DNA from: Laetmonice hystrix
Taxonomy: Eukaryota
Direction: 5' to 3'
Assembly (NCBI GenBank): GCA_965235115.1
Contig: OZ249436.1
Location: 14,818,001-14,882,000, forward strand
DNA length: 64,000 nucleotides
Below the pieces are notes generated by a model. It saw only the letters and a program-made list of their open reading frames with translations. It did not search any database and was not told where the DNA came from. The position numbers and the translations under genes were made by a program. Below, in pieces: positions 32,446 to 59,669 of this stretch (its first letter is position 1; the number at the start of each line of letters is the position of its first letter).

Positions 32446-32601
32446 GCCTACCTGCTCAACATCCCCAGCTGGGACTGGAAGCGGGGAGATGACGCTGTGT
32501 GTCTTGCGGAGTTAAAACTCGGTTTTGTTGCTCAGAGCTGCCTTGCCCCTGGATTCTCCACTCTGATGGCGAACCTCTTCACTATGAGATCCTATAAAAC
32601 G
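32446..32601 (+). CDS. slo1: Slo1 exon: RCK1 ([52 protein letters not shown])
   Basis: AAG-type acceptor (tgtgaag), ACG|gtatgt donor, 156 nt. Confidence 0.96.
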
Positions 32602-32784
32602 GTATGTTGGAATAAAATATAATGGAATGCTCAGTTCTTACCTCGAATAAACCACATTATAATATTAAAGACAGCTTAATTTGCACTGTTAATGCTCACA
32701 GTGGCCCTGATAATATACATTATGAACATTTAGTTGAGCCACTTGTTAACGTAGTTGATGAGTTGATGTGTGTTTGTTTTTCAG

Positions 32785-32897
32785 TCCCCAGATATGCCAC
32801 AGTGGCAGAATGACTATATGAGAGGGACAGGTATGGAGATGTATACAGAGTACCTATCTCCAGCATTTGTTGGTATGACATTCCCTGAGGCTGCAGA
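32785..32897 (+). CDS. slo1: Slo1 exon: RCK1 ([37 protein letters not shown])
   Basis: gtttttcag acceptor, GA|gtaagt donor, 113 nt; EMYTE motif. Confidence 0.97.
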
Positions 32898-33157
32898 GTA
32901 AGTGCCTTACAATGAATTGGGATGGTGATTTTAACCAAGACCAAAAAAAATATTACGGTAGTTTTCTTATCTTTTCAGTCATATGTATTAATTTGGTACG
33001 AGCGTATAGGTTATTCTGAAATTGACATCCGGCTTTCTTGAGACAAACTAACTTGGCTCAATCGTTTTGAGACGATATCCATAACGTGTGAAGTTCTTAA
33101 GTCAGTCTACCGATAACGTGACCTCCTAATGATGGTGGTATATTTGTATTTGAGCAG

Positions 33158-33526: not shown

Positions 33527-33603
33527 GGCGTGCTACTACTGCAAACAGTGCCACGGCGATATACTTGACGTCCGTGCCATTAAAAAGTGCCGCTGTAAAA
33601 CCT
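33527..33603 (+). CDS. slo1: Slo1 exon: ACYYCKQCHGDILDVRAIKKCRCKT (CxxCH heme-binding-type motif; ends at the STREX-equivalent phase-1 site)
   Basis: ttaaag acceptor, T|gtaagt donor, 77 nt (1+75+1); aligns to vertebrate AFFYCKACHDD...IKKCGCK. Missed by the ORF track. Confidence 0.94.
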
Positions 33604-34634
33604 GTAAGTATGATGTCCTACCATGTTCTCCTGTCCCCAGTCTGTTTGAAGATTTCATGATTTCATGTAGTGTACTGGCTGGTTGTCCCCATCGATGTAT
33701 ACCTGTGGATCATATAGTATTATGTTCGGTCATAGTGCGTGTTTAGTTTTATGGTATGATTACGGCAGGCCTACCCGTCACGGGTCAGTAGTTTTGGTTC
33801 ATGGTTTGTGACCTGATCCTGTTATCTTGGATCAAGGTCATTAAACTTTACATCTTCAAGGAAAACAATCCAAATGAGAGAGGTGTTGGTAGTATGATAA
33901 AAGGCAACCGGATAAAAGGATTGAAAGGAGGTATTTCTGTTTGGCAGATACATAAAGTAGATGGAATTCTTCTGAAAGATAAGAAATGAACGACTGGCCA
34001 TCAGTCAGGCGTGTAAGTCGTGCCGTATTACATGGATGATTTGAATGATTGGTTAGATCTATGTATCCCCAGCATGCAGTGTTGGCCTGTGGCCGGCCGG
34101 TGTAGACTCTAGTCGATGGTGTATGGGGTTCGTCATTAGCACATACAGAATGCCACATCTAGTGGAGCAATGGAGCATCTCGACCGCATGCGCCATGAAT
34201 AACCTCGGTTATTCAATGGGGGCAAGGACATGTACCAGTAGCGAGGAAATTGGAAATTTAAGGAATATGTGTATATATGAGAAACGTCTACTGGGTTGAT
34301 CCTATTTGAGTAAATACCCTTTGCCATCATAGTTCTATTTCTAAACTTCAAAGGTCAACATACAGGAAATGTTTCAACACAGAACCGTTTGCGTGTGAAC
34401 CTCAAATGATGCTGGTGGCAAAAATATAATCTATATAATCCATATCAAGTATTTTGATGGGTTCAAGATTACAAAAAACATAGAATGTTTCTTTCGTAAG
34501 TCGTTTGTTCACTGTATTCCCTATTTTGTCCGATTAACGCTGGGCAAGTCTACCTTTGAGTTAGTTCTGTATACTATGATCCCTGTGTGCAGAATCAGTG
34601 TTTTAGCTGGTCATGGACTGTGCATGGCATAAGA

Positions 34635-34894
34635 CTGGGTTTCCATAGAGGTTCACTTTTCACGTGTCACGACTCACGTTTTCAAAGTTAAAACGTTAAA
34701 ACGTACATTGTTTACCTCCATGACAAGCGTGAAACGTGAATTAAGTAACGAACCTGTCCCTTCTGTCTTAGGTTAAACTAACGAAGTGACAGTAGGAGAA
34801 GTAGAAATCAATGAACACATGAAGTCAGTCTACATGAACTGGGTTAAACCCGTCAGGAAAGTGAACGTGACCAGTGAACTTATGTGGAACTCAG
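34635..34894. mobile_element. degenerate MITE-like inverted repeat
   Basis: CTGGGTTTCCATAGAGGTTCAC versus GTGAACTTATGTGGAACTCAG, imperfect inverted match. Confidence 0.4.
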
Positions 34895-37800
34895 CTATGG
34901 GACGCTTTAGGATTGTCGTCACTTGTCATTGACTTGTTGTGAGGTGGTCAAACATAGCACAACATTATGTGTAGTGTCCAGGAGCTTTGCATACTCATTC
35001 GTCTCTATATTGTATGTGTTTTCAAGTGTATCTCAGTGTCAGCACACTTTATGGTGTGTCCGATGGATTAAAGCATTTGCACTGCACATAACGGTCACTG
35101 AACTATTACAATTGTCAGTACTACTAACAGTGTATCCTCTATCAATAAGCACATACTTGCACTCACACTGAGCCCAGATTCAGGATCATACAGTAAGCAC
35201 CATATAAAGACGATGTGATTACCAGCAGTTCCCATGGCCAAGATATTTGCTGGGACTTCGTAATGAAGTCATCAAAGATGCGGACTCATGTTGAACCTTC
35301 CCAGACTGTTCGTTCTGCACATTGTTGGTGCTTCAGTGCAAGCAGAACGAAATCCTCTCCCTACGACAGTACCAGTCGTAGATCGGATTCATGGAGTAAT
35401 TCCTTCAGATCGGGGCTGGCCACTCCTGCTGGGAAATCGAAAAAACGGTGTCAGATATGGCACTTTGGACGCAGTTTAGCCAAAGTTTTCAATTTTGGGA
35501 GGTGCTGACAATATTGTAAAACGGTGAGGAGGTATCGTCAGATATCAGTTCAGTGTGGGTGCAAAACTACGTCGGTCAGCCAGATAGATCTCATAGTGTT
35601 CTAGTGTTTCTTCGTGTACAACTGTAAGACCCGAAGGGAACATGTGTTCAGACATATTGCATTTGAATTTGTGAAATTTGTATCGTTTAAATTGTGAAAC
35701 CTTGTGGATTGAGTCTTTATTTGGAACTTGTCTCTTGTTGTCTCTAAGTTAACAACCTTGATAAAGGTACCTTCATCTTTCACCTACTAAACTGTAACAC
35801 ACTAGAGTAGTATCAAAGATGGGCCTGGTCTCTTGTTGTGTTATCCTGCATTAGTTGACTTGTTTTGGAAAGGTGCCGCCCATAATGTGGAATTGTTATT
35901 ACATGCGTTCTTTTTTGTTGTATATTATACGTTTTTGTTGTATTTTATACGTTTCCGAAGCTTTCGTTCATTATCTGTTGATACATGTACTTATGATAGC
36001 GATTATAGTAATCTCCCAGTGTCGTGTATAGCTGTATACCTAACCGCATGTTCTTGATAAAAACGCTACACATTCAGTAGGTGCCCTTGTGAAAGAATAC
36101 TTCAACATAGCGCACATTTCAGCAAATCTATAGTGTTTCATACGCCAAAGGATTTCTAAAGAATGACTAATGGGTGAGCCACCATTTTTTGCAAGTTTGA
36201 GAAGAATGCTGGCATCTTTATGTCTGATATTTATAACAAGCAAACATAAGTCAATATTTGTCAGGTCAGATTATAGATAATTGGTAGTAATATTAGCAGC
36301 AGTAAAGCAGGAATAGTACAACACATGTCGTAGAATGGAAAAGAAGGAAGTGGGCGGGTAGTTGTTGGTAACAGTTCCCGGTGATAATGCTCCTCGTTTA
36401 CGAAAAAACAAAGAAAAAAATAACAAAAATACAGTAGACATGGCATGTGGGTTCTTTTACGTGTGAAATTGGATTTTGGGCATTTCCAGCTGTAATGATA
36501 TTAATGAATTAACAATTAGCAATGAATTAACAATATACAGTACATGTATATATGGGTATAACATTATAAGATGGGGAAGGAGGAAATATAGGTAGGGAAA
36601 ATACTCCCGTGGTGGAAGTCGAAGAGGAAAGTGTGTTGGTAGTGAGCCGTCCATGTAATGTAGGAGTTCCCATTCAGTGAAGTCAATACTCTAGGAAATC
36701 TGATACATGTAGTGTGCTAAACCCTACTGTGTTTTATCGTCTTTATATGTGTTGTACTTTTTGTGCTATATCCCTATTGTTCCTGCATCGGTTAAAGAAT
36801 TCTTTAGACATACTCGGTACATAGACGTAGCTATGCACATATAAATACTGATCTCACCAATATGAAGAGAGGAAGGACACATAAAAATGCTCAGATTGTC
36901 TGCATCAACCGGACTGGTATAGCCCCGTTCGGACAGTGCAGGAAATGAACGAAATGGTTTATCGCACATAACTGAACCATACAAAAGATCCAATAATGAA
37001 TACCGATTCTTTCAATAACGCAGAAATTCATACTTTTCAAAAGAGTAAGTTTCATGGAAACCTTGAACTTTCTGGTCTAAGCTTCAGTTTGTAAAAACAT
37101 GTAGAATTACCCGTTCTAATAACTAAATTAGTACTACCACACCCTTTTGAATAATCTGGGGCAAATATGAATGAAAACTTGACGGATTAGGTTCCGTCCT
37201 CGGACTGGTTGAATACCACTGCAGTGTCTAGTACCTGTATTTCTTTCAAATAGAAAAACACTGCTGAATCATTTAGTTTCATTCATTGCATATTAAGAAA
37301 CTACTACTGTACATTATATTTCATACAGGTAGAGTGCAAATGTGATTGGGTATTCTGTCATAAATGTAGTATTCAACCAGCCACCATATTTCTCTACTAC
37401 ATACTAATCAGATTATTAACGTGTTCTTGTGTTTTTTGAATGTACTAATATGGCCATCTTTCATTGGAACAGTGAAAATGTTCAAAAAGGGAGCAAACGC
37501 ATTGATAGGTATTGTGCTTTCTAATATATTTAGATATAGTTCATTCTAACTTCACTTTATCTTTCTATAGAACGTATTATGCCACTGATATCTCGATAAG
37601 ACTAATTCATGTGTATAGTGATCTCTTGTATCGTTTCTTTTTCTAAAAGTTTTGAGCCGTGCTCGGCTAGCTTTACTTAAAAGTAGCGTAACACGTTCCG
37701 TATCATATTATGTACATAGTCATTTGTAGTGACGCGTCTTATATGTGGATGCCTCAGTCTCGTGCTTATAATTCCGATGGATGTTCTTCTTTCTAAAGGT

Positions 37801-38120
37801 TTGCCAAGCTTATAATAACATTAGATAGAGCAATGGAAATGAACCAATTGATTCATGATTGAAGAATAGATCAAAAGAAAGACTGCCATCTTGGCGTAAA
37901 GAACAGCTGAAATCTAGCGGCGAGCACGAGGTCACTTTGATAGCGATGACCCTTCACGTCGTGTTGTGTGGCACTTCCCTTATCTGTCGTGTATAATGAA
38001 ACCGAAATATTATAAATCTTGTCTCACCTCTTTATACGGTTGTGAAACCTTTGGTGTTGTCGTGGACTGAAACCTGAATTTTATATGACATTATAATGTC
38101 GTTTGTGTTTGCCGCGTCAG

Positions 38121-38216
38121 TGACCTGCACTTCACTGAGTGCCTCATCGTGTCCGACACCCGAGATTGCCCTTCTGCGAAGCAATGATGCAAACGGCCAG
38201 TTTCTCAACATAGATG
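38121..38216 (+). CDS. candidate 96-nt cassette exon, phase 1/1 (TCTSLSASSCPTPEIALLRSNDANGQFLNID)
   Basis: gtttgtgtttgccgcgtcag acceptor; open in the required frame; weak G|gttaaa donor, with an in-frame stop immediately after it. Confidence 0.35.
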
Positions 38217-39928
38217 GTTAAACAAATACAAACTACTCTCTCTGAATTGCCGCTATGCCTTATTCAACTCCCTGATCAATTACAAGACATGATAAAAATA
38301 TCACTGATGTTAATTCTGCTCTTCTTGCTCCAAGGAATGCAGAACAGTAGTAAAGCTTTACCTTTCTACCTTCTTCATTTCACATAACACTATAGTGCAA
38401 ATATTAGAACCGACATTAACTTACGATTACTGCACCAAGATGTCAGTGGCAGTTACTGCATTTTTGAAATAATCTGATTACGTGTCACTGCATAATAAAA
38501 GAGCAAATTTTCTCACTATGGTATGAGTCACTGGAATATTTACAATCGATTACAACACATGAATGAATGAATGCAGATTGTAAATGCTATCTGTAGCAAA
38601 TTAGCTGCTCTAAATTAGCGAATAAAGAAGTTGATTAGAAAGTTTGAAAAGTTTGGATAGAACTGCTTCGTCTAGTTGCAGAGCCCTTTTGCTTCCCTGT
38701 TATTGAAAATGATAAAAATAAGCATAGGTAGAGTACGGTTTGAAATGTTTATCTGTTATAAGTGGTATATTCCTGTACATGTAGTGTGCAAGTGTATGTT
38801 TTTGTACATGACCAATCGTATACCTTCCTTGCTGAACAAGATCACCACATGCTTTTTGCAGTAATGATAAGGCACGTTTAAATTTTCAGAAAGGACTACA
38901 GTATATCAAATATGAGTTACTATTAACTGAGTCATCGATTAACCTGACCATTTACAGCGTTGCAAGCTTTTTCTGCCACAGACCAGTATGTAATTGTAGG
39001 AAATAATTTAAACCTGCAATTTGCAATTGGAAAGAAAATAATTAAATAAGAAAACTCCCCCGTTAAATATTCACACACAAAAAAAGACACGAATAAGCAA
39101 AAACAGCTATATAAAAAAAAGAATATTATGGACTATTAGATTAAAATCCCAGGAGAAACAAAAATATTGTAGTTCGCTTGTCTTTTCAAACCTGAGATTA
39201 AAGCTTGGAACGCTCCACTTGTCTCCATACAATGTTAAACAAACACCAGCATTCTGCAGATCGTGGCATCTAAATGAAATCGAATTGTAAGCTTACTTTG
39301 ACAATAAAAAATAACATGAAAGTAATTATAGAAATCTTATTTACAGTATGCATAAATTACTACACGTACAAAATGAAAAGTTGAAATGGACAAAACCTAA
39401 GCGGGAGTTTGGGTAGTGATGGAAGAGAAACTGGTCACGTGTTTGATTGTTTCTATTGCAGACAGGCACTCTTTCTCTGATCTCTTTGCACTTGCGGGTG
39501 AGTGATTGAGTTCTGTGCCACGCACAGGCATGCCAATAGCGAGGCCTTTCTGCAGTAAATCACTAGAGCAACTTAGTTTAGTAAGGGGTGTCAAGAAACG
39601 CTTAACCTTGGCTTGGAAACAAGTAATGAATGGTTCTTGTGGTAGTGTCCCGGAAATATTCGAATCCAAACCTCACAAACCTTCAGAAAGAAGGGGACTG
39701 TACACGTTAACCGTAACTCGAACTTTTGCCTGATGGAAGATTGGCAATATATTTATGGGCCGAAGTCTTGGGCCTGCAGATAGAAAATTATGTTTTGCAT
39801 CCAGAAATATTCCTCACCACCCCCCCCCCCCCCCGCAAATTGTAAAGATATTCGGTAAAATCCAGAAAACATGCAAGAAATGAATGTAAAAATCTTCGAG
39901 GCAAGTTTTTCTTGATACCCAGAAAGGT

Positions 39929-40188
39929 GGGCGCATACCGGGCCGACCCGACTGCGACACGACGAGAGTGCATCGGGTCGTCGTCGGGATGCTTTGGTGT
40001 ACGAGGGCTTAACGACGCCGACCCAACGGCCACCGACTGGTTTTGCCCCCGTCGGGACCGGAGGTGTCGGAATGGTCTGCGCGGGAACACTGACCCGACT
40101 GTGACGCGACGAAACTTCTTCCGGCTCCTTCGAAATGCTCGTCCGGAGTAGTCGTCGCGTCACAGTCGGGTCGGGTCGGTGTGCGCCC
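39929..40188. mobile_element. GC-rich palindromic MITE (Harbinger-like)
   Basis: ~37-bp TIRs GGGCGCATACCGGGCCGACCCGACTGCGACACGACGA / TCGTCGCGTCACAGTCGGGTCGGGTCGGTGTGCGCCC; internal GACCC(G/A)AC repeats. Confidence 0.75.
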
Positions 40189-40691
40189 TCCTTATCGCTG
40201 TGAGAAAGCTTCACTAGATCGGTCCCATCACAATCCGCGTTCGGCACTCTCAGCTCGGAGTTGGTTGTTGGAGGAAGCGTGGTATTTCATCTAGAGAATC
40301 TAAGTCAAATGGTGCATGACGTCCTTCTATCTACTGCCTCTAGCCACAAAACTCCCATGTTACAGTGACGTAAACACCCCTTAAATTCTGCCTGGGTAGG
40401 GCCTTAAACCTTTTTTCATGGGAAGGGTGGGAGCGGGGTGGAGAAAATAATTCATAAGAAGTTGTTCATATAATATTCACTGAGCTGACTCCTCCTACAA
40501 CTAGCTCTGCTGAACCTGAGCCAACCAATGCACTTGATGAGTGGTTGAATGAAATAAATCCGGGGTTGAGCAACATGAGACAATCATAATCTTATATCTA
40601 TTAACATAAACCGTGAGATTCCTTTCCTTCCTTTTGGAATATTTACGGTATTTTCTTGTTGACAATTCCTGCTGTAAGTTAAGGATGTGTA

Positions 40692-40898
40692 ATGCCTGGT
40701 ACAAGGCGATTTCCCTTGCGACGGCCATGCGATTTTAGATTTAATGATAGAATTTCACCTTGAAATCTTTCCTGACTGGCTTCTCTGTTCAAGGAAATGG
40801 GTTCCATCTTTTAATCTCAAAATCACAGTAACATAAAAGGGTGATGTCAAAATGGCATGGACGTCGCAAGGAAAATCGCCTTAGTGTGTACCAGGCAT
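40692..40898. mobile_element. MITE / long hairpin
   Basis: ATGCCTGGTAC-AAGGCGATTTCCCTTGCGACGGCCATGC pairs with GCATGGACGTCGCAAGGAAAATCGCCTTAGTGTGTACCAGGCAT. Confidence 0.7.
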
Positions 40899-41904
40899 AT
40901 GACACGAAACATATCTGAAAAAAATGCCAGACAACTTTTGTTCCGGAAAATATAAAAGTTTATGATATTATAGTGCATACATATATTAACTTATAAACTG
41001 TTCATGACCACTCCACGGGGAGACTTGCGAATGAGAGAACTCGACGTATGACCGCAATCATATTTTGAAGCACCAGTTGGGGATTACTGAAGTGTTTGGT
41101 GGGATTCAGTGTGTGTGAAATGTACCGGGAGTAGTCACTCTAGCCTTCCCTATAGAGCACGCATGATCACGTATAGAGGTGCTTTATGGAGTACAAGGCT
41201 GATTCCATTGCTGTTATACACATTCAAATTAGGGGGTTTAGATTGATAATTTGTAAGGAGGAGGTAACATTGATAATTGTCATTTACTAAAAAAGCTTGG
41301 CTTTCTGTTTGTGCCGCGTCTGTCCCTGCCGCTATGTGTTGTGTCTGTGTAGTCCATGTGGTTTGGCGACATGTCTAACCGTCATAGTAATTGTACACGT
41401 AGTATCACCACGGTACAGGGACACATGAGTGCAGCAGCTTCTCTTGTCTTAAGTGGAACTGGAAATGTTTTAGTGTCGTTTCTCAGGTTCCGTACAGTGG
41501 AGTACCATTTCAGAGAGGTTAGACAACTCCTGACATGAAGAGTATAATTGTGTTACAGAATGGACTCGCTGACAATTCGTTGCAATACTTGTAGGAGTTT
41601 TTTTACTGGTCCTTCCTATACGAATTGTTCGTTGACAATGTTGTAAGTGATAAATGACGTATTGAATTTTGTGGAGCAAGCCAAAGTATTTAACGCAGGA
41701 TACTATATTTAAAATGAATACAACTTTTTAATCGTTTGATAGCGTTCTGTAATAACCTGTAAATGCACCACGCAAGTTTCATGATATGTGATCAAATGTT
41801 GTGAATGTATATTGTCAGTAGGTGAAGGTTATATACCCTTGGGGGTTTATTGTGTCAGAGGGAACAGCTGTTTGAATTGAGTCATTCAAACAAACTGTTC
41901 ATGA

Positions 41905-42430
41905 TGCATGAATGGAATGTTATGATGGTATGAACACGGTCTGAGTGAACGATTTCGTTGGGGGGTTTCCTACTGCTCTGATCATTATGAACTTTGTTGA
42001 AATGTTAAGTTAAGCTATATTGCTGTAGATGTTTAATGCTCTTGCAATATAATCATTTGAACCTTAGAAATTGCTTGCATTTCAAATCTGACAAGGAATG
42101 CAGCGTGTATCTATGCCTTGCATGTTGACGTACCCGGGAATAGAATTTATATAAAAAAAACTTAGCTTAAGCTTCATGTTCCATGATGTACATGTTCGAA
42201 AAAAGAGGAAGCTGAGGTATTTTTGTTTAAGCAAATCACAGGGTTTCCCCCTGTGACCCTTTACAGTTGGGTCATTCTTGGTTATTTGTTAGCTATTAGC
42301 TATGCGCAGAAAAATGCATGTGCTTATTATGTTTTCATTAAATATAGAAATTCCAACCAAGCGTGCATGCTTTATTTTTTGTTTTGTTTTTATAGGAAAA
42401 CAAGACAGAAATAAACCATTTTTATGCATG
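41905..42430 (+). promoter_or_regulatory. cluster of five TGCATG (Rbfox-type) motifs
   Basis: TGCATG at 41905, 42119, 42315, 42364 and 42425. Confidence 0.5.
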
Positions 42431-42537
42431 AAGCTTTAGACTTAGCAACATATCACTGGATTTATGATATCTTTGCCAATCATGTCTCAACTGCGTCTGT
42501 CATTTTGTGTGATTTGCCTTGTTTTTGCTTTACTTAG

Positions 42538-42597
42538 CCTACTCACAATACAACTGTGACAACCCCAATGCATACTCCTCTTCACCTAAAGCCCTAG
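42538..42597 (+). CDS. candidate 60-nt cassette exon, phase 1/1 (YSQYNCDNPNAYSSSPKAL)
   Basis: Long polypyrimidine tract plus ttag acceptor, TAG|gtatat donor; only the phase-1 frame is open; TGCATG cluster upstream. Confidence 0.5.
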   Translation, partial: PTHNTTVTTPMHTPLHLKP

Positions 42598-42875
42598 GTA
42601 TATATGCCACTTTCTTTCCTACTAACATGACTGCTGAAAGCACCAAAAGAGGATTATCGGTTTTTGACGAGAACATTGCTGAGTTAACAGGTCATAGTTT
42701 TGATAATGGCTGGGGTATTTAGATGTTGAACTAGATGAAAATTAGTAGATAAAACCCCTTTACTTTAGGAACTGTGACATCACACAGGTATATTTACATT
42801 AGCAGAGTTGTATCCGTTCAGATACTCTCCATATTAGACATGTTAAACCTGTTTCCACGGTTTTCAATTGTTCAG

Positions 42876-42911
42876 AACCAAATTATATGGTGCGAATTTA
42901 CCTAATACATG
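42876..42911 (+). CDS. candidate 36-nt cassette exon, phase 1/1 (EPNYMVRIYLIH)
   Basis: ttttcaattgttcag acceptor, G|gtactc donor; open in frame only after a non-T-ending exon. Confidence 0.25.
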
Positions 42912-44410
42912 GTACTCACATTTCCCGGTAATGGATGCGTTCAAGTGAAGCCTATTTTAAAGGATTCGTTAAGCGACGAATTGAATCGTAGGGAATCTGA
43001 CGGAAACGTTAAGAAGGCAGAACGACGCGAAGTGAATGTGCCTGTGTGTTAAACTGTTAGAAATATTTTCTATCCGAGATACAGGAGGAAGGATATCGTT
43101 ATTACCAGCCCAGCCTGGTGTGCAATATTTGTATGTCTATCAGTTTCCAGCCCTGTAGCTGTATACTAACTAAAGTTAACACCATAGAATTGTTTTTAAT
43201 ATGTGGTGCGATGTATTTTTACTCCTAAAGATGAGGGTATAACGGGTATGCTGTCAAGTAAGCAGGACTTTTTTTTGGCATTCCGTTTGATGGTCTGCAT
43301 CCCCTCATCCTCATGTTGGTAGTCGGCAGTAACTTGATAATTCTTGTTAAATATTAACCTTCATATCAAAGTCCGCCATCTAGATCATGGGCGCATCCGA
43401 TAACTCTCCCCGCTTTAATATTTTCAAGTCTGAAGTTGAAGTGTGTGTGAAAGCCCCTGGAATATGTTGCCTATATATAGAGCTGGATTCCTTTTTCGTC
43501 AAAGGGCCATGTGAGTGAGCAGACATTGCACTAGTATGTCAGTATAGCAGCGCGATAGAAAGTGACTTGGTACCAAACGCTAATAATCTTATACATATCA
43601 GTAAACTCAAATAGAGATGAAATATTTTCAAAATGACAACCTAAGTTCCAAAATGCTGTGCTATCAGCTTTTGTATACATAAGTGCACATACACCAGCAA
43701 CAGCGCACTAGAAACCCCCGAAAAGGATCACACAGCCTACACATGGTCCTCTGAGGCTCTTCTGATTTTATTTTCAAACTACTTGCTTAAGTATAATATT
43801 AATGGATAATGATGACATCAACTCTTTCTCAACTGATCTGCAAGCATGCCTCGTTTCGTCTGTTTGCATTAGTTTGCTAGTCCTCCAATTCACGGTTCTG
43901 AAGGATTTTTTAAAAATATATTACGTACCGGTACTTTTATTATTTCTTCTCGAATAATATATTAGGTGCTTTTTTGGTTGATGTAACATTAAATTGAGTG
44001 TTCAGTTAACACAACTATTATCCATTTCTTTCTGTTTGAGCTTTTTTATGATAATTATTATTTTCGATTTGATTAATTATTGATTACTATTAACGCATTG
44101 ACCTTCAGAGCTAACCGATACCTTTTTTCATTTTTTTTTCTCTGATCATTCGGTCGGATGTCTACCTCTTTCTCTGAAGCACACCGTCTATGTTAGAGAA
44201 ATTTCGGTCACAGTTACAGCTGAGAGAGCTGGTTTTGACCCGTGCACCCATTTTGTCATCACTGTGATGACAGACCCTTTTGATGATGATTATCATGATG
44301 AGTATGATGTTGTGCGATGATGTTGATGATAATGATGATGAACATGTTTGATCTCCTGTGATATATTCCCTAACTGACATCTTCTGGTGTGGTGTTTGTC
44401 TGTTATCCAG

Positions 44411-44473
44411 CCCTTAACAAAAAGACTCCAGCCGCGACAAACGCCACCACAGAGGCGAACCCGTCTGAGACCG
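44411..44473 (+). CDS. candidate 63-nt cassette exon, phase 1/1 (LNKKTPAATNATTEANPSET)
   Basis: ccctaac branch-point-like motif, tgtttgtctgttatccag acceptor, CG|gtactt donor; GC-richer than flanks; open. Confidence 0.6.
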
Positions 44474-45535
44474 GTACTTGACTTGACTCATTTGATGCCA
44501 CTTTGTTTGATCGTCGTGTTGTCATGACCAGACACCTCGTGCCTTCCCCACAAACCCCTGTCATATATTTCTCTATGCGAAGAAAGAGTTCGAATGTATT
44601 CCTATGACACGTTCATTTTTCAATGCTGTAAACCAGCGCAGTGCCTGAAATCCGTCCCGGCGAGGTTATGAATGTCCACCTTCTTTCCCCATCCTCGACA
44701 GGGGCCGACTTTCACGCAGGACGTGATAGCCTAGTCTTGAGTTCCCCTCCGGTACTTTCGGGTATTTACTAGTCTGGGACTTGAGAAGGGGATCCATGGC
44801 GGACTTCACTTGATGTTTGGTCACGATAGCCTGACAGTGAGAGCTCCTGCACCTTTGTATTCAGATGGTAGCACGTAATGATGTTGTTTGCTGTCAGTAC
44901 GGGGGTTAGGTCGTCTTCTTGTATACGTAGCACCTGAGAGTAGATGGTAGCGTTGAAATGAACTTGACAACAGAAAACTAGGCCTATTTTTGCGCCTACT
45001 ATAAGAGTGGACTTGATTTAGAATTTCATAGAAAGTAAACAAGATTCTTTTAGGTAGCTAGTTGGTTTATCACTTCCCTCCTTCTAGCCCTATTACGAAG
45101 TATGAGATATGACTATTTTTTCTGTAGCCTTTCTAGAAGAAGTTGGTAAGAATTTTTAATAATTCTTCTGCTTGCATCGGTTACTTCATGTCATCGTCCC
45201 TCATTCTGTATGGGCCTAGTGCCAATTTAAGTCGGCCCAGTGGTCGCACAGCCGTAATAAACATCACTTACATAAAGTTTCAAAAGGGAAGAACACACCT
45301 ACACCTACGCCTATAAGCCTACGTATGCAAAAAAAAAAAAATCTAGAATTGACCAAAGACTCTCAGAAATGGTTTCTGGGCCTGGGTCTGGACTGGGAAT
45401 TTACGGCGCGTCCTGGTAATCTTATGGCGCCATCTGGTGTGAATATTGAAGCAGCGAGCATGGTCGTCCGAATTTGACACCAAACGGCATTTTGGTTCCC
45501 TCTCATTATTGTTTTGAGGCCTTTTGATATTTCAG

Positions 45536-45568
45536 AAATAGAGGAATCACACGATGCAGTCCCACCTT
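45536..45568 (+). CDS. candidate 33-nt cassette exon, phase 1/1 (EIEESHDAVPP)
   Basis: cttttgatatttcag acceptor, TT|gtatgt donor; open after a G-ending exon. Confidence 0.55.
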
Positions 45569-47076
45569 GTATGTATATGATGTTATCCGGAATGCTTGCT
45601 GAACAGATTTGCTTGAATACACGAAGGCACTGTCGTTTTCCGCCAGTGGTTAGGCTACCACTGTTCAGGACGGGCTGTGAAGCATGTCAGCCAACGTGCA
45701 CTCACAATTTTAAATGAGATCTCCCACAGATTGTCAGGATCAGAATAACTCGTGGATAATCCATCGAAAGAGAAATCTTAACGTGTGTTATCGTAGCCGT
45801 ATAGGTTCCCCGGTATGCCTACCTATTCTACTCATTTTTTTCATTTTGGATTTTCTTTAGATGTCACTAAGGCTACTCAATAAGTGGCGCTTAAACATAT
45901 ATTTTCAATTTGGTACAGGTTAACCATATATGATAATGATCAACAATTGCATATAATATTGGATATAACTGAACAAGGCGAAGTGAGGGAACTATTCAAA
46001 CTACAGCTCAAAGTGGAAACCTGGGAGCGCCACCTTGCGACATCCCGCGGAATCAGATAAATCAGATTCCGTCTAAAAGGCCTACTGCTACTAGACCATT
46101 GGCTACCAATTCAAACAGGTTCAATTTTTTCAACCCGCGCTGTAAAAAAAAACAACGTTTTCCAATGAAGGAAATTAAGGGTAAATTTAAATTGGAGGAA
46201 TGGTGTTTAATTTTAAATCTTAAAAGATACTGAGAAGATAATAGTTGTTCACACAGGCCTCACACGTTTAAAAACAAAATGTGACATCAGAACAGGGAGC
46301 TGTTTGCCTTACGAGGTTATAAATACTCTCCAAGGTGTCTTCAGGAATATTCACCCTCCAGGGCGAGATTGACGAGAGGACTTAGAACACGTGCGTACAT
46401 GCGTAATTACGCCTAAAAAAGGGATATATCATTGGGTTTCTGCGGCATCGATTCATTCTGTCAGAGTGAATCTGGTCGGTTGTGACTTGATCGCACATAC
46501 TTCACTCGGGACACTGTCACATACCACTTTATAAGTCGATCACTAGACACTGTTGATTGAAACGGTACCTCTTCCAGACCGTCCCAGCGACAGGGCTTAA
46601 CATGTCGTCTCCTGCTGTGTCATGATTAATGTCATGTACATGTGTCATAAACCTGGAGTCGCAAGGCCCTCACACACTCGTGTACTACTGCATAATGCGC
46701 ATCATGTTTCGCCTTCACCACCTCTATACCGTATATAATATGGATTTTATAATTAAAATATGAGAAATACATAAATTCCACATGTATGATATTGCGATAT
46801 GTCCGGTAAGTGTTTTAAGTGATTCGTACTTTGCACGGTGCAGTTCAAAATTTGGCAGTTATGGTTATTGTGAGAGAAAAATCTTTTCTTCCTCAATCCA
46901 GGAAAAAAACATTGACAGATTTCGTAATATTAACAACACATGCCCATTTAGGACACCATTTGAAGATAGAGCGTCTGAAATTTACCACGCCATCATTACG
47001 TACGGAGTTGTGGTACTATCCCAAACAGAACTATTTATTACAGTGATGAGAAGAGTTTAACTTTTTTATTTTCTAG

Positions 47077-47167
47077 TGAACATGCCTTTCTCAAAAATGC
47101 TGAAGGAGAAAAGTACCCCTACAAGTCCGCGACGAAGTGGGGGACGTATCGGCTCCTCGGTGTCAAG
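47077..47167 (+). CDS. slo1: Slo1 linker exon (LNMPFSKMLKEKSTPTSPRRSGGRIGSSVSR), phase 1 to phase 2
   Basis: Strong ttttttattttctag acceptor and AAG|gtgagt donor, 91 nt, open. It is the best-signalled exon I found that supplies the phase 1-to-2 change needed to join 33603 to 53901. Confidence 0.85.
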
Positions 47168-47224
47168 GTGAGTGTCACTGGCAGTGGTACTGGAAACTAG
47201 GAGTAAGCCCTACCTCATGTTTGT

Positions 47225-47670
47225 TGTGGCTTGTTTGTTCTTCTTCTTCTTATTCTTCTTGTCCGTCTTTCTTCTTTTTTATTTCTACTTCTTTTTTCTT
47301 CTACTCGGTCGTCGTCGTCATCTCCTCCTTCGTTTTAACCTTGTTCTTGTTCTCCTTTCTCCTGTTCTTCTTTTTCTTCTTAATTTCCTTCTCTATTTTC
47401 TTCGTCTGTTTCATCGTCCTTTTCCTCCTTCATCTTCTACTGTTTCTACTTCTACTTTTTCTTCTACGTCGTCGTCGTTACCTCTTGTTCTTGTTCTTCT
47501 TTCTCTTTTCAGTTTAATTTCTTTCTCTATATTCTTCGTCTCTGTTTCATCATCCTTTTCCTCCTTCATCTTCTACTGTTTCTACCTCTACTTTTGCTTC
47601 TAATTCGTCGTCGTCGTCGTCGTCATCTCCTTCCTTTTGTCCGTGTTCTTGTTCCTCCTGTTCTTTTTCT
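47225..47670. repeat. pyrimidine-rich low-complexity tract with ~3 degenerate ~135-160-bp units containing (TCG)n
   Basis: TTTCTACTTC...GTCGTCGTC blocks at about 47282, 47443 and 47579; source of the spurious F/L/S-rich ORFs. Confidence 0.85.
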
Positions 47671-47676
47671 TCATAA

Positions 47677-48022
47677 AGTGCTACAGACATCACATAGGCA
47701 CCTTTACTGATCTAAATAGATCACTGTGAGTTGTAGACGTATCCGGGATAGGTTTTTCTGATAAATTAACATTTGTAAAAATATTGACAATTTGAATCAC
47801 GCTGCCCGTGATGACGTAAGCACCAACTGGCGGGTGGACCCTGGACGGGAGGCGACTGGCAGACAGATGGCCAGCAGAAACCGGCTGAATTGGTCATTTT
47901 GATCACGGATTACAGTTCACGTTGTTGTACAACAACCGTTCCTTTACAGAACAACGAGAACATTACAAGTATTATCGGGATCTGGTGCAAAATTTCATAG
48001 TAATTGTGATGTCTGTACCACT
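47677..48022 (+). mobile_element. ~345-bp MITE, Kolobok-like (copy 1)
   Basis: TIRs AGTGCTACAGACATCAC / GTGATGTCTGTACCACT; ATAA and TTAA flanks. Confidence 0.75.
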
Positions 48023-48526
48023 TTAATTTCCTTCTCCACATTCTTCGTCTTTGTTTCGTCTTCTTCCTCTTCTTTCCGTCTCATTACTCTCTACAAGATT
48101 ATTATATGTGTTAATGTATTTTGGTTGTCTCAGTTTTATATAGTAGCAACTTAAGCAAAGGTAGGTATTTTGTCTCTATGGGAACAATGTCTCTTTTTTG
48201 TGTACTGTTATAATTTTGACACGTTCCCCCCTGCTAACCATACGTATTTGAGTATCTGATCATGTATGAAGTATAATAATAGAAAATCTCGTACGACAGA
48301 TGTAGTCGGGGAAAAATTTGTTTCAGGTGTGAACAGGTTTTATGTTAACTGAACACAGAATTAGAGTGTTAAATGCATCAGTGACTGATCAGAAAAGGGT
48401 TTTGTTATCGCAAGAGTAGATCCTACATCGTAAACTGTGCTAGTACATGTATTGTTAAATACTGTGGAATGGTGTTGTTTGGAATTGCTTTGGAATGACC
48501 CTAAATTAATTGCATTATTGCTTTAT

Positions 48527-48869
48527 AGTGGTACAGACATCACAGTTACTATGAAATGTTGTTCCAGATCCCGATAATACTTGTAATGTTCTCGTTGTTC
48601 TGTAAAGGAACGGTTGTTGTACAACAACGTGAACTGTCTGTAATCCGTGATCAAAATGACCAATTCAGCCGGTTTCTGCTGGCCATCTGTCTGCCAGTCG
48701 CCTTCCCTCCAGGGCCCACCCACAGTTGGTGCTTACGTCATCACGGGCAGTGTGATTCAAATTGTCAATATTAATGTTAATTTATCAGAAAAACCTATCC
48801 CAGATACGTCTACAACTCACAGTGATCTATATAGATCAGTAAAGGTGCCTATGTGATGTCTGTAGCACT
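48527..48869 (-). mobile_element. ~345-bp MITE, Kolobok-like (copy 2, inverted relative to copy 1)
   Basis: Reverse complement of 47677-48022 along its whole length with few mismatches and indels; TTAT and TTAA flanks. Confidence 0.75.
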
Positions 48870-49132
48870 TTAAATGACTGGGAAAGATACGAGCGCTTGC
48901 TGAACAGATAACGGTTTTCCGATTAACCATCCTTGATTTATGCCTGATGATTACTGTGAAAGTAGGCTAACAAGTAGAAGAATAATTGAAGCTTTTAGCT
49001 GTCACTCAATTGTACGTGTACCTTCTTGCACAGACATTTGTAAGAGAACTCTCTGTAGGAGGTGAAGGGGTGTGCCTTTTAGATTTCTGCGCTATTAGCT
49101 GCTTTTCATTGCTTGTTCAGTTGAAATTTTAG

Positions 49133-49168
49133 GATCTCTGGCTCCTTTTTACTCCTGAGTCGAAGAAG
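49133..49168 (+). CDS. candidate 36-nt cassette exon, phase 2/2 (ISGSFLLLSRRR)
   Basis: TGC-containing pyrimidine tract, aaattttag acceptor, AAG|gtataa donor; open in the required phase. Confidence 0.4.
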
Positions 49169-52100
49169 GTATAATTACTGATGTGTAGAATAACATTTCT
49201 TTGCCCAATTAAAGTATTCTGAAGTGCTTGTAAGCACAGCCACATCAGTTCTATGAGTGTTGTAAAAAACCTATACATGTACCTCTTAACCCTACATAAT
49301 AAAACTATGTATATTTCCGAAAACGTCCCCTTTTCGCACACAATTCCTGATTATGTGCAATTTTACTCGGGATAAATGGTGTAATACTCGGTATAACCGT
49401 GTAACGCAGTTTTTTCCTGAGAAAGGCGAGGGACCGTGTCCTCTGTTTCAAACTGGTGTTCCGTGTTCTCGACGAGTAAAGTTCCAGCACGTGGCTCTAA
49501 CCTGGAATTATGTGCCATTGGATAGACAGATAACGTTGGCAGTTTCACATTCTGTCGGCAGATCGTACCTGATCAAGAACAGGGAGGGGTAAAACGATCA
49601 TCTGGAAGATTGAAAATGAGAGTCTGCTAGTAGATGTCACCAAAATATATGCAATACATGGGGTCCTTTGTTGACGCATTGTCAAGGCTGTGAATGACAT
49701 ATTTCAGGAAGTAGTTCGAGGAACTTTGGCGGTTATATTACAACATTTGAAATCTGCCGGATCTCGGTGTGGGAACTGACAAAAGACAATGTTATCACCC
49801 ATAAACTTCCTTAGGTGGCGATTATATCGCCGACCTGAGCACCTTCTCAAATAATAAATCCCATTACCGCATAATGTCCCAGTAATGTCATCACTGTAAT
49901 TGCGCATGCATGTGGCTGTGATGTGATGTAAGACCTGCAATGAAGGAGAAGAAAATGAGCAACGTATTTGATTTTCACTTGCACCTATAAATATGCAGAT
50001 TGGGTGAAAACTTTATTTTCTTCTTTTTCATTATTCATATACATGTATGTGACATAGTGGCGCTCTCTAATGACCCTCTCTTAGGGAATGCATCAGTGAT
50101 GTGCATCAGCAGAGATAACCACACTGATCACTCGTTGAGTAATACATTTCCCTGTTCTTTCATCGTTTCAGTGTCAGTAAATTGTCAATGGCTTTTGCCC
50201 TAGGCATAGGGTAAATGTTCCGATTTTCATGTTTACCTTTGGTCCCTTACCGTTAAGGTTCCTTGCCTGTCCTTGAGTGGATGATTCGGGTATTCCATAG
50301 GATGACTTTGAATGACCTGTGAATGACCTTGGGTGACCTTCATATGACCTTAACAACTCCGGTGTTTAGAAGGCTGTAGTAGAATTTAAGCTCGAGGGTT
50401 ATGAAAAGTGCCATGTCAACGTTTTGCCTTTACCGTCATCACAATTCATAGTTACACTAATATGTTATTTTGCATTTTATATTGCATCTATCAGTATAGA
50501 TATACATTTTTCTTACTTTTAAACTGCTTTAAGGATGCAGCAGAATGCACCTTTGAAACATTTTATGACTTTTTAGATTTTTTTGTGATCAAGCTTTTAG
50601 TCGTGATTTTCAGACTTGCCTGAAACTTTGACATGGTGGAGCATCTTGTTTGTCTTTTTTCTTTCTTTTTAAAAATCTTAACTTATTTCTTGAAGAACAG
50701 GCGTGCGGGGGTCTTTTGGGCACGGAAATGAATCGTAAAAATCCTACCGGTATTATATCCTTGAACAAATGGTACAGTGAGAGAGTGTTTCTTGTGTTTC
50801 TGGACCGTACGTGGAAGGCGGTAGATTGACAAATTGAACCAAAGTCCTTCGATGGGGTATTATGCACTGTATGGAAGATAGATCCATTGGGGTAGGGAGT
50901 TTATGAGTGCACCCCTCAATGCTATCACCTGTGTCCATCGCAAACCTCTTTATGCTCCAAGATCCCTGACCATTCGAGACTCGTGTTAGAGGCACCAGTG
51001 CTAAAACATACTTACCAGTGCATATAAGAAGGCCTGTTTCAGGTGATTCGTTCATAGACTTTCATTTTCCCAGAGGAATTTTATATTTTGTGGTTTAGTA
51101 TATCTTCTGGTGAAGTAAGGACAGCTGAACAGGTGGTACATCTCGGGTATCGTGATACACATCTGCATACACCATTGATGAGAACGGGAGAACCGCACTA
51201 TAGAGCATGGCCCGTGTTTCTTCTAATATTGATACCACAAGCATGACGATAACTTGCTTAGTGTATTTCACTTTATAATTATGGCATACGATATGGGGCC
51301 TAGTACATGCCGACCTTGGTGGGAGAATACAGAAGAGTGATTAGATAAGGTAACAGTATCCGCACGCCACACTTTTGGCCCCATTTTTTCTAACCTGGAG
51401 CTTTTAGTTCCGGAACAATAGAACCCGGCTTCCTCAGATGGCGGGAAATTAAATCTGAAGCTAGCATGAAATAATTCCTGGGAAAGGATTCCAAGAACCG
51501 CAGTATTTTCAGTCGTCAAAAACGTTGAGAGTCTCATTCTGTAATTCATGGATCCACCCCGCTATACCGTTTGTATAAACAAAGCGTTTACCTTAGAATA
51601 GAGACTTGTTTAATAAACGGTATATAGAGTTTTAGAGTCGAGTGTCGGCCCGTATTAACGCTAGGCCTTGGTATCGTATCATGGTACCAATAATATTACA
51701 ACATGTACACTACCAGTTCACATACTGTTCTCCGCCTTTGAGCCATTATTTAAGGTTATAAAAGTCAATTGTTAATTCAACCAAGCACACATTTTCAAAA
51801 GATTTCATGTATTTAGCATGCACCAAATATAATTTATACTAAACAGTTGTACGTAATACACAATTTATTAGTTCGACCACTGTTAGAGTTACATATCAGG
51901 TGTTTTACTTTTACCTGCTGTAGTAGAATTGGAAGTTGTTTAAGCTGTTCAATCAAAAACGTAAACTATTTCATTGCAAGTGAGTAAACGTTCACATTTG
52001 GAACCAATACGAAACTGGTTAGTTTCTGTGCAGAGACCTTGGCCTCAAGCTGAACAACTTCCATAGGTCTACAAATACAGTGCACCTGTACTCAACCTCT

Positions 52101-52195
52101 CTACCTCTCGTACACGTCGCGTTTTGTCATTAGTTTGTCGCCAATTGCTTCAAACGACACCAGCTCACCGTCCATGTTGGCGTTTTGCGTTTCAG

Positions 52196-52261
52196 CTCAA
52201 TTGGTAGTGCAGAGACTGAGGAAGCCAAAGCAGAGCCAAAACCTCTACCAATGTACGAAAA
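52196..52261 (+). CDS. candidate 66-nt (or 57-nt) cassette exon, phase 2/2 (SSIGSAETEEAKAEPKPLPMYEK)
   Basis: gttttgcgtttcag acceptor; two in-frame donors (AT|gtacga after 52252, AA|gtatgc after 52261); purine-rich; open. Confidence 0.55.
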
Positions 52262-53900
52262 GTATGCTTTCTTGGTCGGTTCATTCTTTAATTTTTTCCT
52301 TTTTTTGTAACTTGGTTTTGTTAGTGTCACAAAGTGGACCGTTTAGATCTAACACATGGGTCGAATGAAAGAAAACAGAAACGCCAAAAAAAGGGGAAAA
52401 TACAACGCCGCAGCTTATGTAATACTTATGTAATACACAATTATAGATATTTTCTTTTAATGCTAAAATGCCACACTAGGGTGACTTATTTTTGCTTTGC
52501 TCCCGCGAACTTTCTGCTTGGTTTCTTCGTCGCCAACAAGAGGGCTTGTGCTTCTGTCAGTTGTCACTAGATGGCAGTATTAATGTTACCCTGAACCGGT
52601 GGCCGAGATCCTAGTAGCAAGTTCTGACACTAGAGCTTCGGAAAATTCGTCCAGAACGTGTGTGCATGAGATCTGCTATAACAAGTTATCGGTACATGAT
52701 GTTGCTAATTGATTTTAATAGTGTTCAGAATGATCTTGACCTTTTAGATAGCATACATGGTCTCCAAAACGCGAGGCTATGTAACTTGGTACAGACAAGT
52801 CTAGGTGGTCCACTTGCATTCCCTTATTTAGGACTAATCAGACTGATTAGTCCATACTGAACTAACACCGTTTGGATTTTGGATAGTGTTTAACGTTTTA
52901 TTTCTTTCCCCTGTGCCCCCATCTTCCTGCATCATGTTTAATGGTTTTTTTACATACTTGAACTGAACAAAGTTCCGAGTGTAGAAATTAATTTTGTCAG
53001 TATACATTCTACAGTTATACAGTTAGATCAACTGATCACGAAAAGAGTGATGTCGTGATTCTGCTCAACTGGTTCCCAGTAGGGAAGATCACATTGGCAG
53101 GTCATTGGTTGAAATAGGATGATATTATCTCAACCAGTTGTTCTTACATGACGTGGCCGCAGGAGTCGGTATCACCAACGATTCTATGGAAACCGTCACA
53201 CAGTACGAGTTGAGGGTTGTAAAGATGAGGGATACAAGAAGTTCTAGAGCAGTAGCGTAATCAACAGACACATTCTTACCTCATTTATTCACAGATATTG
53301 CTAACTCGCAGTTTTGTTATGAGTCAGCGAGTAATTAGTGAGTCAGTTATGTGACTATTTTGTATGCATGTATTTTTTAAAACAATTTATATACATTTAT
53401 TATTGTGTGCCATGTATCAGTCGTGATATTGATGCAATTTTGGATGTCACACACAACATTGTGTACATATACAAATACAAATATTCGATTGGTTCTCTGT
53501 TTTTGCTGTATTTAACAGTGGATTCTGGTACCGTATATAAAAAGAAGGAGATTTATTTGCCTCCCTGCCACTCCCTCGTTATGGGATTACGTGTGCGAGT
53601 CACTTTCTGAATGTTCTATTTGAAACTCCTCAGGATAACTACATTCTCCTATTTCCCTACTGTTGGAAGTGAACACAGTCCCGCTTGAACATTAGTACGT
53701 TTTGTAGCCACCAGGTGGTGCCACCACGGTCCCCGTCCCCAACATCCGATGACCCCGCCCCCTGACTAAAATCTCAACACCGTGTCGGAGGTCATGAGAT
53801 GTTCTAACCCAATTCACTGTGTGGTTCCCTAATCCAGTCTAACCCCGCTATACACCGTCACAGTGTGTTCGCTGTACTCATAGAATGATACCTGTTACAG

Positions 53901-54039
53901 ACCCTCCAGTCCTACGGGCGAAGGAGGGGGTGAAGGCACAGAGGGAGGGGGTGTCGACCCCACCAATGATCCTCGGAAGTTTGACTCGACAGGCATGTTC
54001 CACTGGTGTCCCGAGCAGCCTCTTTCCACGTGCCTCGTG
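53901..54039 (+). CDS. slo1: Slo1 exon: end of linker into RCK2 ([46 protein letters not shown])
   Basis: cctgttacag acceptor, GTG|gtaagt donor, 139 nt; conserved K(Y/F)DSTGMFHWC. Confidence 0.95.

Positions 54040-59429: not shown

Positions 59430-59669
<240 letters not shown>

What the first reader, a model, noticed from the sequence alone, without database searches (positions are those of the whole stretch)
33604..53900. Combinatorial cassette-exon array in the 20-kb RCK1-RCK2 linker region of Slo1
Seen in sequence: between the CKT exon (ends phase 1 at 33603) and the DSTGMFHWC exon (starts phase 2 at 53901) there is one phase-converting exon (47077-47167). Five frame-preserving AG/GT-bounded segments upstream of it (38121, 42538, 42876, 44411, 45536) are open in phase 1. 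Two downstream (49133, 52196) are open in phase 2. All eight can be chained without a stop. Established: this is the position of vertebrate STREX and of alternative linker sites in Drosophila slowpoke, where inserts change Ca2+ sensitivity and kinase regulation. Inference: a lineage-specific combinatorial set of BK isoforms. I do not recognise these peptides from known Slo1 inserts. Caveat: I searched for segments fitting these phases, so some will be chance matches.
Basis: partly seen in the sequence, partly recalled or inferred. Interest (0 to 1): 0.75.

Follow-up and report, generated by a model that had tools for sequence, protein, structure and literature searches.

The report
Conserved microexon array in Slo1 linker

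Summary
The window holds most of a Slo1/BK gene whose closest solved relative is the Aplysia BK channel.

Being AG/GT-bounded, 3n long and open is not evidence. About 700 such segments occur in intron A-B and about 340 in intron B-C, the same as on the reverse strand and in shuffled sequence.

I fetched the syntenic DNA of two related species. The introns do not align, but eight sharp, collinear islands do: B, C and six small exons.
- X1 37473-37508
- X2 39462-39497
- E3 42538-42597
- X3 43231-43257
- E4 44411-44473
- X4 50172-50210

All six keep AG/GT and a 3n length in all three species. The indels are 3 and 6 nt. Every X1 and X2 difference is synonymous. X1 matches a segment of the expressed Aplysia BK protein and a present-or-absent segment of annotated wasp slowpoke isoforms.

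42876, 45536, 49133 and 52196 show no conservation, and 38121 shows one weak block in one species.

All 64 combinations of the six exons stay open. Alternative use is inferred, not shown, because no RNA runs were available. This is a new member of a known kind. The scan also holds a similar, untested note on another piece of this genome.

The parts
33527..33603 (+). Exon A, the last RCK1-side exon (...AIKKCRCKT). It is 77 nt and ends in phase 1, carrying T.
   Evidence: It matches Aplysia BK residues 599-622 and the wasp slowpoke protein. R2 has a 77-nt orthologue with 93% amino-acid identity.
37473..37508 (+). X1, a 36-nt phase 1-1 microexon encoding LKMFKKGANALI.
   Evidence: AG/GT and the 36-nt length are kept in the window, R1 and R2. 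All 4 and 3 differing codons are synonymous. z = 22-24. It is homologous to LAMFKKGAAAVL in the Aplysia BK chain and resembles ATFRKGVRAVQMVG in wasp isoforms.
39462..39497 (+). X2, a 36-nt phase 1-1 microexon encoding (D/Y)RHSFSDLFALA.
   Evidence: AG/GT and the 36-nt length are kept in all three species. 5 and 5 codons differ, all synonymously. z = 23-27. About 45 nt of upstream intron is also conserved.
42538..42597 (+). E3, a 60-nt phase 1-1 exon encoding (A/S)YSQYNCDNPNAYSSSPKAL.
   Evidence: The R2 orthologue is 60 nt and the R1 orthologue is 63 nt, a 3-nt indel. AG/GT is kept, and conservation stops at the donor. z = 10-13.
43231..43257 (+). X3, a 27-nt phase 1-1 microexon encoding DEGITGMLS.
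   Evidence: It is 27 nt with AG/GT in all three species. The R1 and R2 peptides are DEGLTGLLT and DEGLTGLLS. z = 10-15.
44411..44473 (+). E4, a 63-nt phase 1-1 exon with an LNKK start and a Thr/Pro/Ala-rich tail.
   Evidence: It is 63 nt in R2 and 69 nt in R1, a 6-nt indel. AG/GT is kept and the frame is open in all three. The LNKK start and about 35 nt of UG-rich upstream intron are conserved. z = 9-16.
47077..47167 (+). Exon B, the obligatory phase-converting exon (phase 1 to 2). It is 91 nt and encodes NMPFSK...PTSPRRSGGRIGSSVS.
   Evidence: It is 91 nt in R1 and 94 nt in R2, so 3n+1 in all three. z = 22-36.
50172..50210 (+). X4, a 39-nt phase 2-2 microexon encoding SVSKLSMAFALGI.
   Evidence: It is 39 nt with AG/GT in all three species. 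The R1 and R2 peptides are SLGKLSLAFALGP and SLGKITLAFALGP. z = 8-13.
53901..54039 (+). Exon C, the first RCK2-side exon (...[23 protein letters not shown]). It starts in phase 2.
   Evidence: It matches Aplysia BK residues 700-726. Orthologous open reading frames from several related genomes all start at RPSSP. It is conserved in R1 and R2.
38121..38216 (+).
   Evidence: One 38-nt block (38170-38207) resembles R1 (score 19 against a null of 10.6 +/- 1.2). Nothing matches in R2. From the matching acceptor R1 offers no 3n-length donor (possible lengths 17, 44, 52, 79 and 92 nt).
42876..42911 (+).
   Evidence: No similarity in the syntenic interval of R1 or R2. It starts with AA, which gives TAA after exon A.
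45536..45568 (+).
   Evidence: No similarity in R1 or R2. It starts with AA, which gives TAA after exon A.
49133..49168 (+).
   Evidence: No similarity in R1 or R2. It lies 260 nt beyond a high-copy inverted-repeat element.
52196..52306 (+).
   Evidence: No similarity above the null in R1. In R2 the result is marginal (p about 0.04 among 10 tests) and falls outside the short versions of the exon.

Best explanation
The 20-kb interval between exons A and C of this Slo1/BK gene holds one obligatory exon (B, 3n+1) and six small protein-coding exons kept by purifying selection. These are X1, X2, E3, X3 and E4 in phase 1-1, and X4 in phase 2-2.

Shown:
- The six exons exist as conserved, collinear, AG/GT-bounded units of 3n length in three species, with coding-type substitution patterns.
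- Any subset of them can be included without a stop or a frameshift.

Inferred:
- They are modular inserts of 9 to 21 residues in the RCK1-RCK2 linker, which was disordered in the Drosophila Slo cryo-EM model.
- At least some are alternatively included cassette exons. Inclusion would change linker length, charge and candidate phosphorylation sites (RHSFS in X2; SPRRSGG in B) and would add a hydrophobic patch (X4). That would tune Ca2+/voltage gating and kinase regulation, as linker inserts do in vertebrate and insect Slo1.

For: - Gene identity: BK_channel_a match at window positions 32488-32904. The best solved relatives are Aplysia, human and Drosophila BK. Exon-by-exon match to a slowpoke protein.
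- Conservation: two related-species contigs (R1, R2) align to the 33.6-53.9 kb interval only at X1, X2, E3, X3, E4, B, X4 and C, in the same order. Local-alignment z-scores are 8-27, against 22-36 for exon B.
- Exon structure: AG/GT is kept and lengths are 36/36/36, 36/36/36, 60/63/60, 27/27/27, 63/69/63 and 39/39/39 nt.
- Substitutions: X1 and X2 show only synonymous differences, 17 codons in all. Ungapped identity in the flanks falls to 27-45% (65% upstream of X2 in R1).
- Protein homology: X1 aligns to LAMFKKGAAAVL in the Aplysia BK protein used for structures. X2, X3 and X4 have no counterpart in that isoform.
- Modularity: 0 of 64 combinations create a stop.
- Precedent: 118 annotated wasp and other arthropod slowpoke proteins show 42 different linkers built from present-or-absent modules at the same position, including the X1-like module.
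- Disorder: the Drosophila RCK1-RCK2 linker (C631-E777) is disordered in cryo-EM (PMC8660915).
- Splicing in the family: Slo-1 splicing with present-or-absent exons is documented in nematodes, flies and mammals (PMC4270693).
Against: - There is no RNA evidence. The run search found only three DNA-like holders from one study.
- Two protein-database searches with spliced linker peptides found only genomic read-through reading frames, or nothing.
- The exons could all be constitutive. X1 is in the one known mollusc cDNA-derived protein.
- Only two relatives were available, and their distance from the window's species is unknown.
- E4's body and much of E3 and X4 change at the amino-acid level.
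- Two more distant contigs were uninformative.
Confidence: 0.72

Rival explanations
1. All six conserved small exons are constitutive. The linker is simply encoded in many short exons and there is a single main isoform.
For: X1 is present in the Aplysia BK protein. With all six exons the linker is about 143 residues, within the 85-193 range of annotated arthropod linkers. No skipping has been observed, because no RNA data exist.
Against: All six are 3n long and symmetric in phase. The chance of that is about 0.004 if lengths were free and only the sum were constrained (my calculation). Intron sequence next to X2, E4 and X1 is conserved, which is typical of regulated exons. The Aplysia linker is 82 residues and lacks X2-, X3- and X4-like sequence. 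The X1-like module is present or absent in wasp isoforms.
Confidence: 0.22
2. One reading: the seven listed segments (38121, 42538, 42876, 44411, 45536, 49133, 52196) are all real cassette exons forming the array.
For: All seven are AG/GT-bounded, 3n long and open when chained. Two of them are confirmed as conserved exons.
Against: Hundreds of such segments are expected by chance. Four have no counterpart in either relative, although the syntenic intervals are covered, and 38121 lacks a frame-preserving counterpart. Two create TAA after exon A. Species-specific new exons cannot be excluded without RNA.
Confidence: 0.03
3. The conserved islands are non-coding intronic elements, such as splicing or transcriptional regulators, and not exons.
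For: There is no RNA evidence of inclusion. Some conservation extends into flanking intron at X2 and E4.
Against: The islands start and stop at conserved AG and GT. Indels are 3 and 6 nt. X1 and X2 change only at synonymous positions of the predicted frame. X1 is found as protein sequence in Aplysia BK.
Confidence: 0.03

Closest known systems
Insect slowpoke linker cassette exons (NCBI isoforms of Polistes, Vespa and Vespula; Drosophila slowpoke splice sites)
   Same: The position is the same, directly after KKCxCK. The array is built from short present-or-absent modules; 118 proteins show 42 linkers. One module (ATFRKGVRAVQMVG) resembles X1.
   Different: The other modules have no clear sequence relation to X2, E3, X3, E4 or X4, and the module order differs. 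The insect isoforms are annotated in NCBI; I did not check the evidence behind those models. The mollusc ones are not supported by any RNA data here.
Vertebrate KCNMA1 site C2 / STREX insert
   Same: The insertion point is the same, after the CGCKR/CRCKT motif at the end of RCK1. Both are optional inserts in the RCK1-RCK2 linker that alter Ca2+ sensitivity and kinase regulation (my own knowledge of the literature; splicing in general in PMC4270693).
   Different: STREX is a single Cys-rich insert of about 58-61 residues. Here there are six inserts of 9-21 residues with 0-1 Cys. No sequence similarity was seen.
Aplysia californica BK channel (PDB 5TJ6/5TJI)
   Same: It is the closest solved relative. 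Its 82-residue linker contains the X1 homologue, which shows that X1-type sequence is expressed in a mollusc.
   Different: That isoform has no X2-, X3- or X4-like sequence. Its middle linker does not align convincingly with B, E3 or E4.
Nematode slo-1 present-or-absent exons
   Same: Four splice sites give 12 or more variants in C. elegans, some of them in the cytosolic linker (PMC4270693). The hookworm protein has an RDYSGFDALF stretch that loosely resembles X2.
   Different: The resemblance to X2 is by eye only and was not tested statistically.

Membership tests
Slo1 / BK (KCNMA1, slowpoke) channel alpha subunit | BK_channel_a (PF03493) domain in RCK1 | tested here: met
   53.9 and 41.2 bits against a cut-off of 26.8, at G000:C1:14850488-14850904, which is window 32488-32904.
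Slo1 / BK (KCNMA1, slowpoke) channel alpha subunit | Calcium bowl (run of Asp, [12 protein letters not shown]) in RCK2 | tested here: met
   The exon at 59454-59582 reads [21 protein letters not shown] and is 95% identical to wasp slowpoke.
Slo1 / BK (KCNMA1, slowpoke) channel alpha subunit | Closest relatives are BK channels across the pore, RCK1 and RCK2 | tested here: met
   Aplysia, human and Drosophila BK chains are the top solved matches for four separate exons. The collinear tblastn match to slowpoke covers residues 124-1112.
Slo1 / BK (KCNMA1, slowpoke) channel alpha subunit | Selectivity filter TVGYGD | tested here: not met
   The only pore exon in the window reads TVGFGD at 22124; human BK aligns GYGD at the same place. 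This is a Tyr-to-Phe change within an otherwise typical Slo1. No second pore exon was found in the window.
Alternatively spliced cassette exon | Canonical AG/GT borders, 3n length and the same phase on both sides, so that skipping keeps the frame | tested here: met
   This holds for all six exons in three species. 0 of 64 combinations give a stop.
Alternatively spliced cassette exon | Conservation of the exon, and often of flanking intron, across species | tested here: met
   z = 8-27 in two relatives. Flanking intron blocks are conserved at X2, E4 and X1.
Alternatively spliced cassette exon | Transcripts both with and without the exon | not testable with these tools
   No RNA runs are on record for this organism. 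Spliced protein fragments are absent from the protein collection in the size range I could search.
STREX exon | Single Cys-rich insert of about 58-61 residues at site C2 | tested here: not met
   By inspection of the chained translation, the inserts are 9-21 residues with 0-1 Cys each. The STREX features are from my own knowledge; no formal alignment was run.

The most novel reading that the evidence does not exclude
The six microexons form a bivalve-wide splicing code of up to 64 linker isoforms. The invariant X2 (RHSFSDLFALA) would act as a kinase-controlled switch. The hydrophobic X4 would act as a membrane- or partner-binding patch. Together they would be a functional analogue of STREX built from microexons, sharing one ancient module (X1) with insects and gastropods.
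Probability: 0.3. Interest if true: 0.5.

Novelty: new member of a known kind. Interest (0 to 1): 0.4.

Why it matters
Alternative splicing of the RCK1-RCK2 linker is the main way animals diversify BK channel gating and kinase control, but it has been described mainly in vertebrates, flies and nematodes.

A conserved set of symmetric microexons in a mollusc, one of them shared with insects and Aplysia, suggests that a modular linker is ancestral to protostome Slo1. It also gives exact coordinates for RT-PCR and for expressing defined isoforms.

For the scan there is a method lesson. Phase-compatible AG/GT open segments are at chance level. Cross-species islands recovered the real exons, including four that reading alone missed.

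Tried and rejected
- RNA route. The look-up of sequencing runs (kind rna) returned three DNA-like holders from one study and no RNA run. I did not use read laying, because DNA contigs cannot show splicing.
- Spliced protein fragments. A search with A+B+C found only read-through reading frames from genomic contigs. These were nevertheless the handle to the related genomes. A search with A+X1+X2+E3+X3+E4+B found nothing.
- Full-length mollusc isoforms. The representative search gave mostly single-exon fragments and no mollusc full-length protein. MAFFT scattered the window's exons along the wasp protein, so those alignments were not used. The profile search (A3) was swamped by wasp isoforms; 7646 hits were found and the best 120 listed, with no mollusc among them. 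I could not hand in a spliced full-length model of the window's protein, because it has no reference and is too long to type.
- More distant contigs. L011 and L012 carry exon C but no recognisable B or X4 within reach. The metagenome contig L005 covers only RCK2.
- Paralogues. Three other BK_channel_a loci in this genome have short linkers without X1 or X2 homologues. Exon C is single-copy.
- Repeats. The whole-genome repeat check of the two introns lists only the top-scoring families, so it does not clear each candidate.
- Splice-site strength does not discriminate between the conserved exons and the unsupported candidates.
Full report
**What the window is.** The window is G000:C1:14818001-14882000 of a 627-Mb genome. 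On the + strand it carries most of a Slo1/BK gene.
- tblastn with a wasp slowpoke protein finds collinear exons for residues 124-1112, from 16224 to 60062.
- PF03493 (BK_channel_a) matches at window 32488-32904.
- The calcium bowl is at 59454-59582.
- The closest solved chains for four exons are the Aplysia, human and Drosophila BK channels.

**The observation.** Exons A (33527-33603), B (47077-47167) and C (53901-54039) are real.
- A ends in phase 1, carrying T. B is 91 nt. C starts in phase 2.
- A aligns to Aplysia residues 599-622 and C to residues 700-726.
- The seven listed segments exist: 38121-38216, 42538-42597, 42876-42911, 44411-44473, 45536-45568, 49133-49168 and 52196-52252/52261/52306.
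- The full chain is open.
- 42876 and 45536 start with AA, so they make TAA directly after exon A. 5 of the 32 subsets of the five upstream segments contain a stop.

**Chance level.**
- Intron A-B holds 695 AG..GT, 3n, in-phase open segments. The reverse strand holds 645, and Markov shuffles give 596 +/- 60.
- Intron B-C holds 337, against 344 +/- 49 in shuffles.

**RNA.** The single run search found three holders from one study, each with 86-90% of the words of a mostly intronic 10-kb stretch. That means DNA, and none is on record as RNA. Splicing could not be observed directly.

**Related genomes.** A protein search with the spliced A+B+C peptide returned read-through reading frames from genomic contigs of related animals. 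From these I fetched and walked two contigs.
- R1 is ENA ERZ25767047 ctg38225. I read 28.9 kb of it.
- R2 is Logan ERR14368249_35174, the whole 20.1-kb contig.

The introns do not align. blastn and tblastx of window 33.4-54.2 kb against R1 and R2 give sharp islands only at exon A (R2), B, C and six further places, in the same order in all three species. Three-way alignments fix the borders:

| Exon | Window coordinates | Length in window / R1 / R2 (nt) |
|---|---|---|
| X1 | 37473-37508 | 36 / 36 / 36 |
| X2 | 39462-39497 | 36 / 36 / 36 |
| E3 | 42538-42597 | 60 / 63 / 60 |
| X3 | 43231-43257 | 27 / 27 / 27 |
| E4 | 44411-44473 | 63 / 69 / 63 |
| X4 | 50172-50210 | 39 / 39 / 39 |

- Every copy has AG before it and GT after it.
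- Every length is a multiple of three, and the two indels are 3 and 6 nt.
- Exon B is 91, 91 and 94 nt, so 3n+1 throughout.
- Local-alignment z-scores against shuffles are 8-27 for the six exons and 22-36 for B.
- X1 and X2 encode identical peptides in all three species. All 17 differing codons are synonymous.
- Ungapped identity in the 60 nt on either side falls to 27-45%, except upstream of X2.

This is the signature of coding exons in the predicted frames.

42876, 45536, 49133 and 52196 have no counterpart in the covered syntenic intervals of either relative. 38121 has one 38-nt block similar to R1 (score 19 against a null of 10.6 +/- 1.2) and nothing in R2. R1 offers no 3n-length donor from the matching acceptor. 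I leave that block unexplained. Two of seven candidates are therefore supported, and four real exons were missed.

**Protein-level links.** A spliced peptide A-X1-X2-B-C aligns over the whole Aplysia linker.
- LKMFKKGANALI (X1) pairs with LAMFKKGAAAVL in Aplysia, so X1-type sequence is expressed in a mollusc BK protein.
- That isoform has nothing like X2, X3 or X4.
- The Aplysia linker is 82 residues. A+X1+X2+B+C would give about 80, and the full chain about 143.

The profile search, although swamped by wasps, was useful as context.
- 118 annotated arthropod slowpoke proteins carry 42 different linkers.
- These linkers are built from short present-or-absent modules directly after KKCKCK.
- One module is ATFRKGVRAVQMVG, which resembles X1.

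Two papers add background. The Drosophila linker (C631-E777) is disordered in cryo-EM (PMC8660915). Slo-1 splice sites with present-or-absent exons are documented in nematodes, flies and mammals (PMC4270693).

**How it most likely works.**

Shown: one obligatory phase-converting exon is flanked by five phase 1-1 exons upstream and one phase 2-2 exon downstream. All 64 combinations are open, because none of the real exons starts with AA, AG or GA.

Inferred: at least some of these exons are cassettes that change the length and chemistry of the disordered linker.
- X2 carries RHSFS, a basophilic-kinase-type motif.
- B carries SPRRSGG.
- X4 is hydrophobic.
- E3 and E4 are Ser/Thr/Pro-rich.

Three things support modular use:
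- the all-symmetric design, with a probability of about 0.004 if only the summed length were constrained;
- conserved intron blocks next to X2, E4 and X1;
- the Aplysia isoform that lacks X2-, X3- and X4-like sequence, and the insect precedent.

Against it, there is no transcript evidence, and all six could be constitutive.

**Comparison and novelty.** This is the same kind of thing as the insect slowpoke linker cassettes and sits at the vertebrate STREX position. It is not STREX, because there is no long Cys-rich insert. It is a new member of a known kind. What is new is the exact, conserved exon set in this lineage and the shared X1 module.

**Verdict.** I am about 0.9 confident that the six exons are real coding exons and about 0.6 that several are alternative. 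Interest is 0.4.

Noticed in passing
window 22028-22195 (filter at 22124): The only pore exon in the window reads TVGFGD where human BK aligns TVGYGD. This is a Tyr-to-Phe change in the selectivity filter of an otherwise typical Slo1. It was not checked in R1 or R2, whose contigs do not reach it.
   Followed up: partly
window 31880-32016: A tandem duplication of about 68 bp copies the acceptor and the first 42 nt of the exon that encodes [13 protein letters not shown]. There are therefore two near-identical acceptors in a row. The effect on splicing is unknown.
   Followed up: no
window 47674-48026 and 48523-48873: Two 350-bp arms in inverted orientation, 94% alike, belong to a high-copy family spread over many contigs of the genome. 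This looks like a foldback or MITE-like element inside intron B-C.
   Followed up: no
window 40692-40903: A 200-bp repeat with its own inverted ends has dozens of copies at 86-93% identity across the genome. It lies inside intron A-B.
   Followed up: no
window 47170-47700: A long CT-rich, low-complexity tract lies directly downstream of exon B. It is open in all three frames as Ser/Phe/Leu runs.
   Followed up: no
It may be an intronic element or chance.
   Followed up: partly
G000:C6:14205901-14212800, C6:8009921-8018400, C8:8312999-8325100: Three further BK_channel_a loci exist in the genome. Two are divergent Slo-like genes with A-to-C linkers of only 3-5 kb, and none has an X1 or X2 homologue. 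An earlier scan note (s1-342784) reports a phase-1 microexon array in an RCK1-RCK2 linker on another piece of this genome; I could not place it.
   Followed up: partly
window 39417-39461 and 44375-44410: Intron sequence just upstream of X2 (GAAACYGGTCA...TTGTTTCTNTTGCAG) and of E4 (GTGTGGTGTTTGTCT, UG-rich) is conserved in all three species. These are candidate splicing-regulator sites.
   Followed up: no
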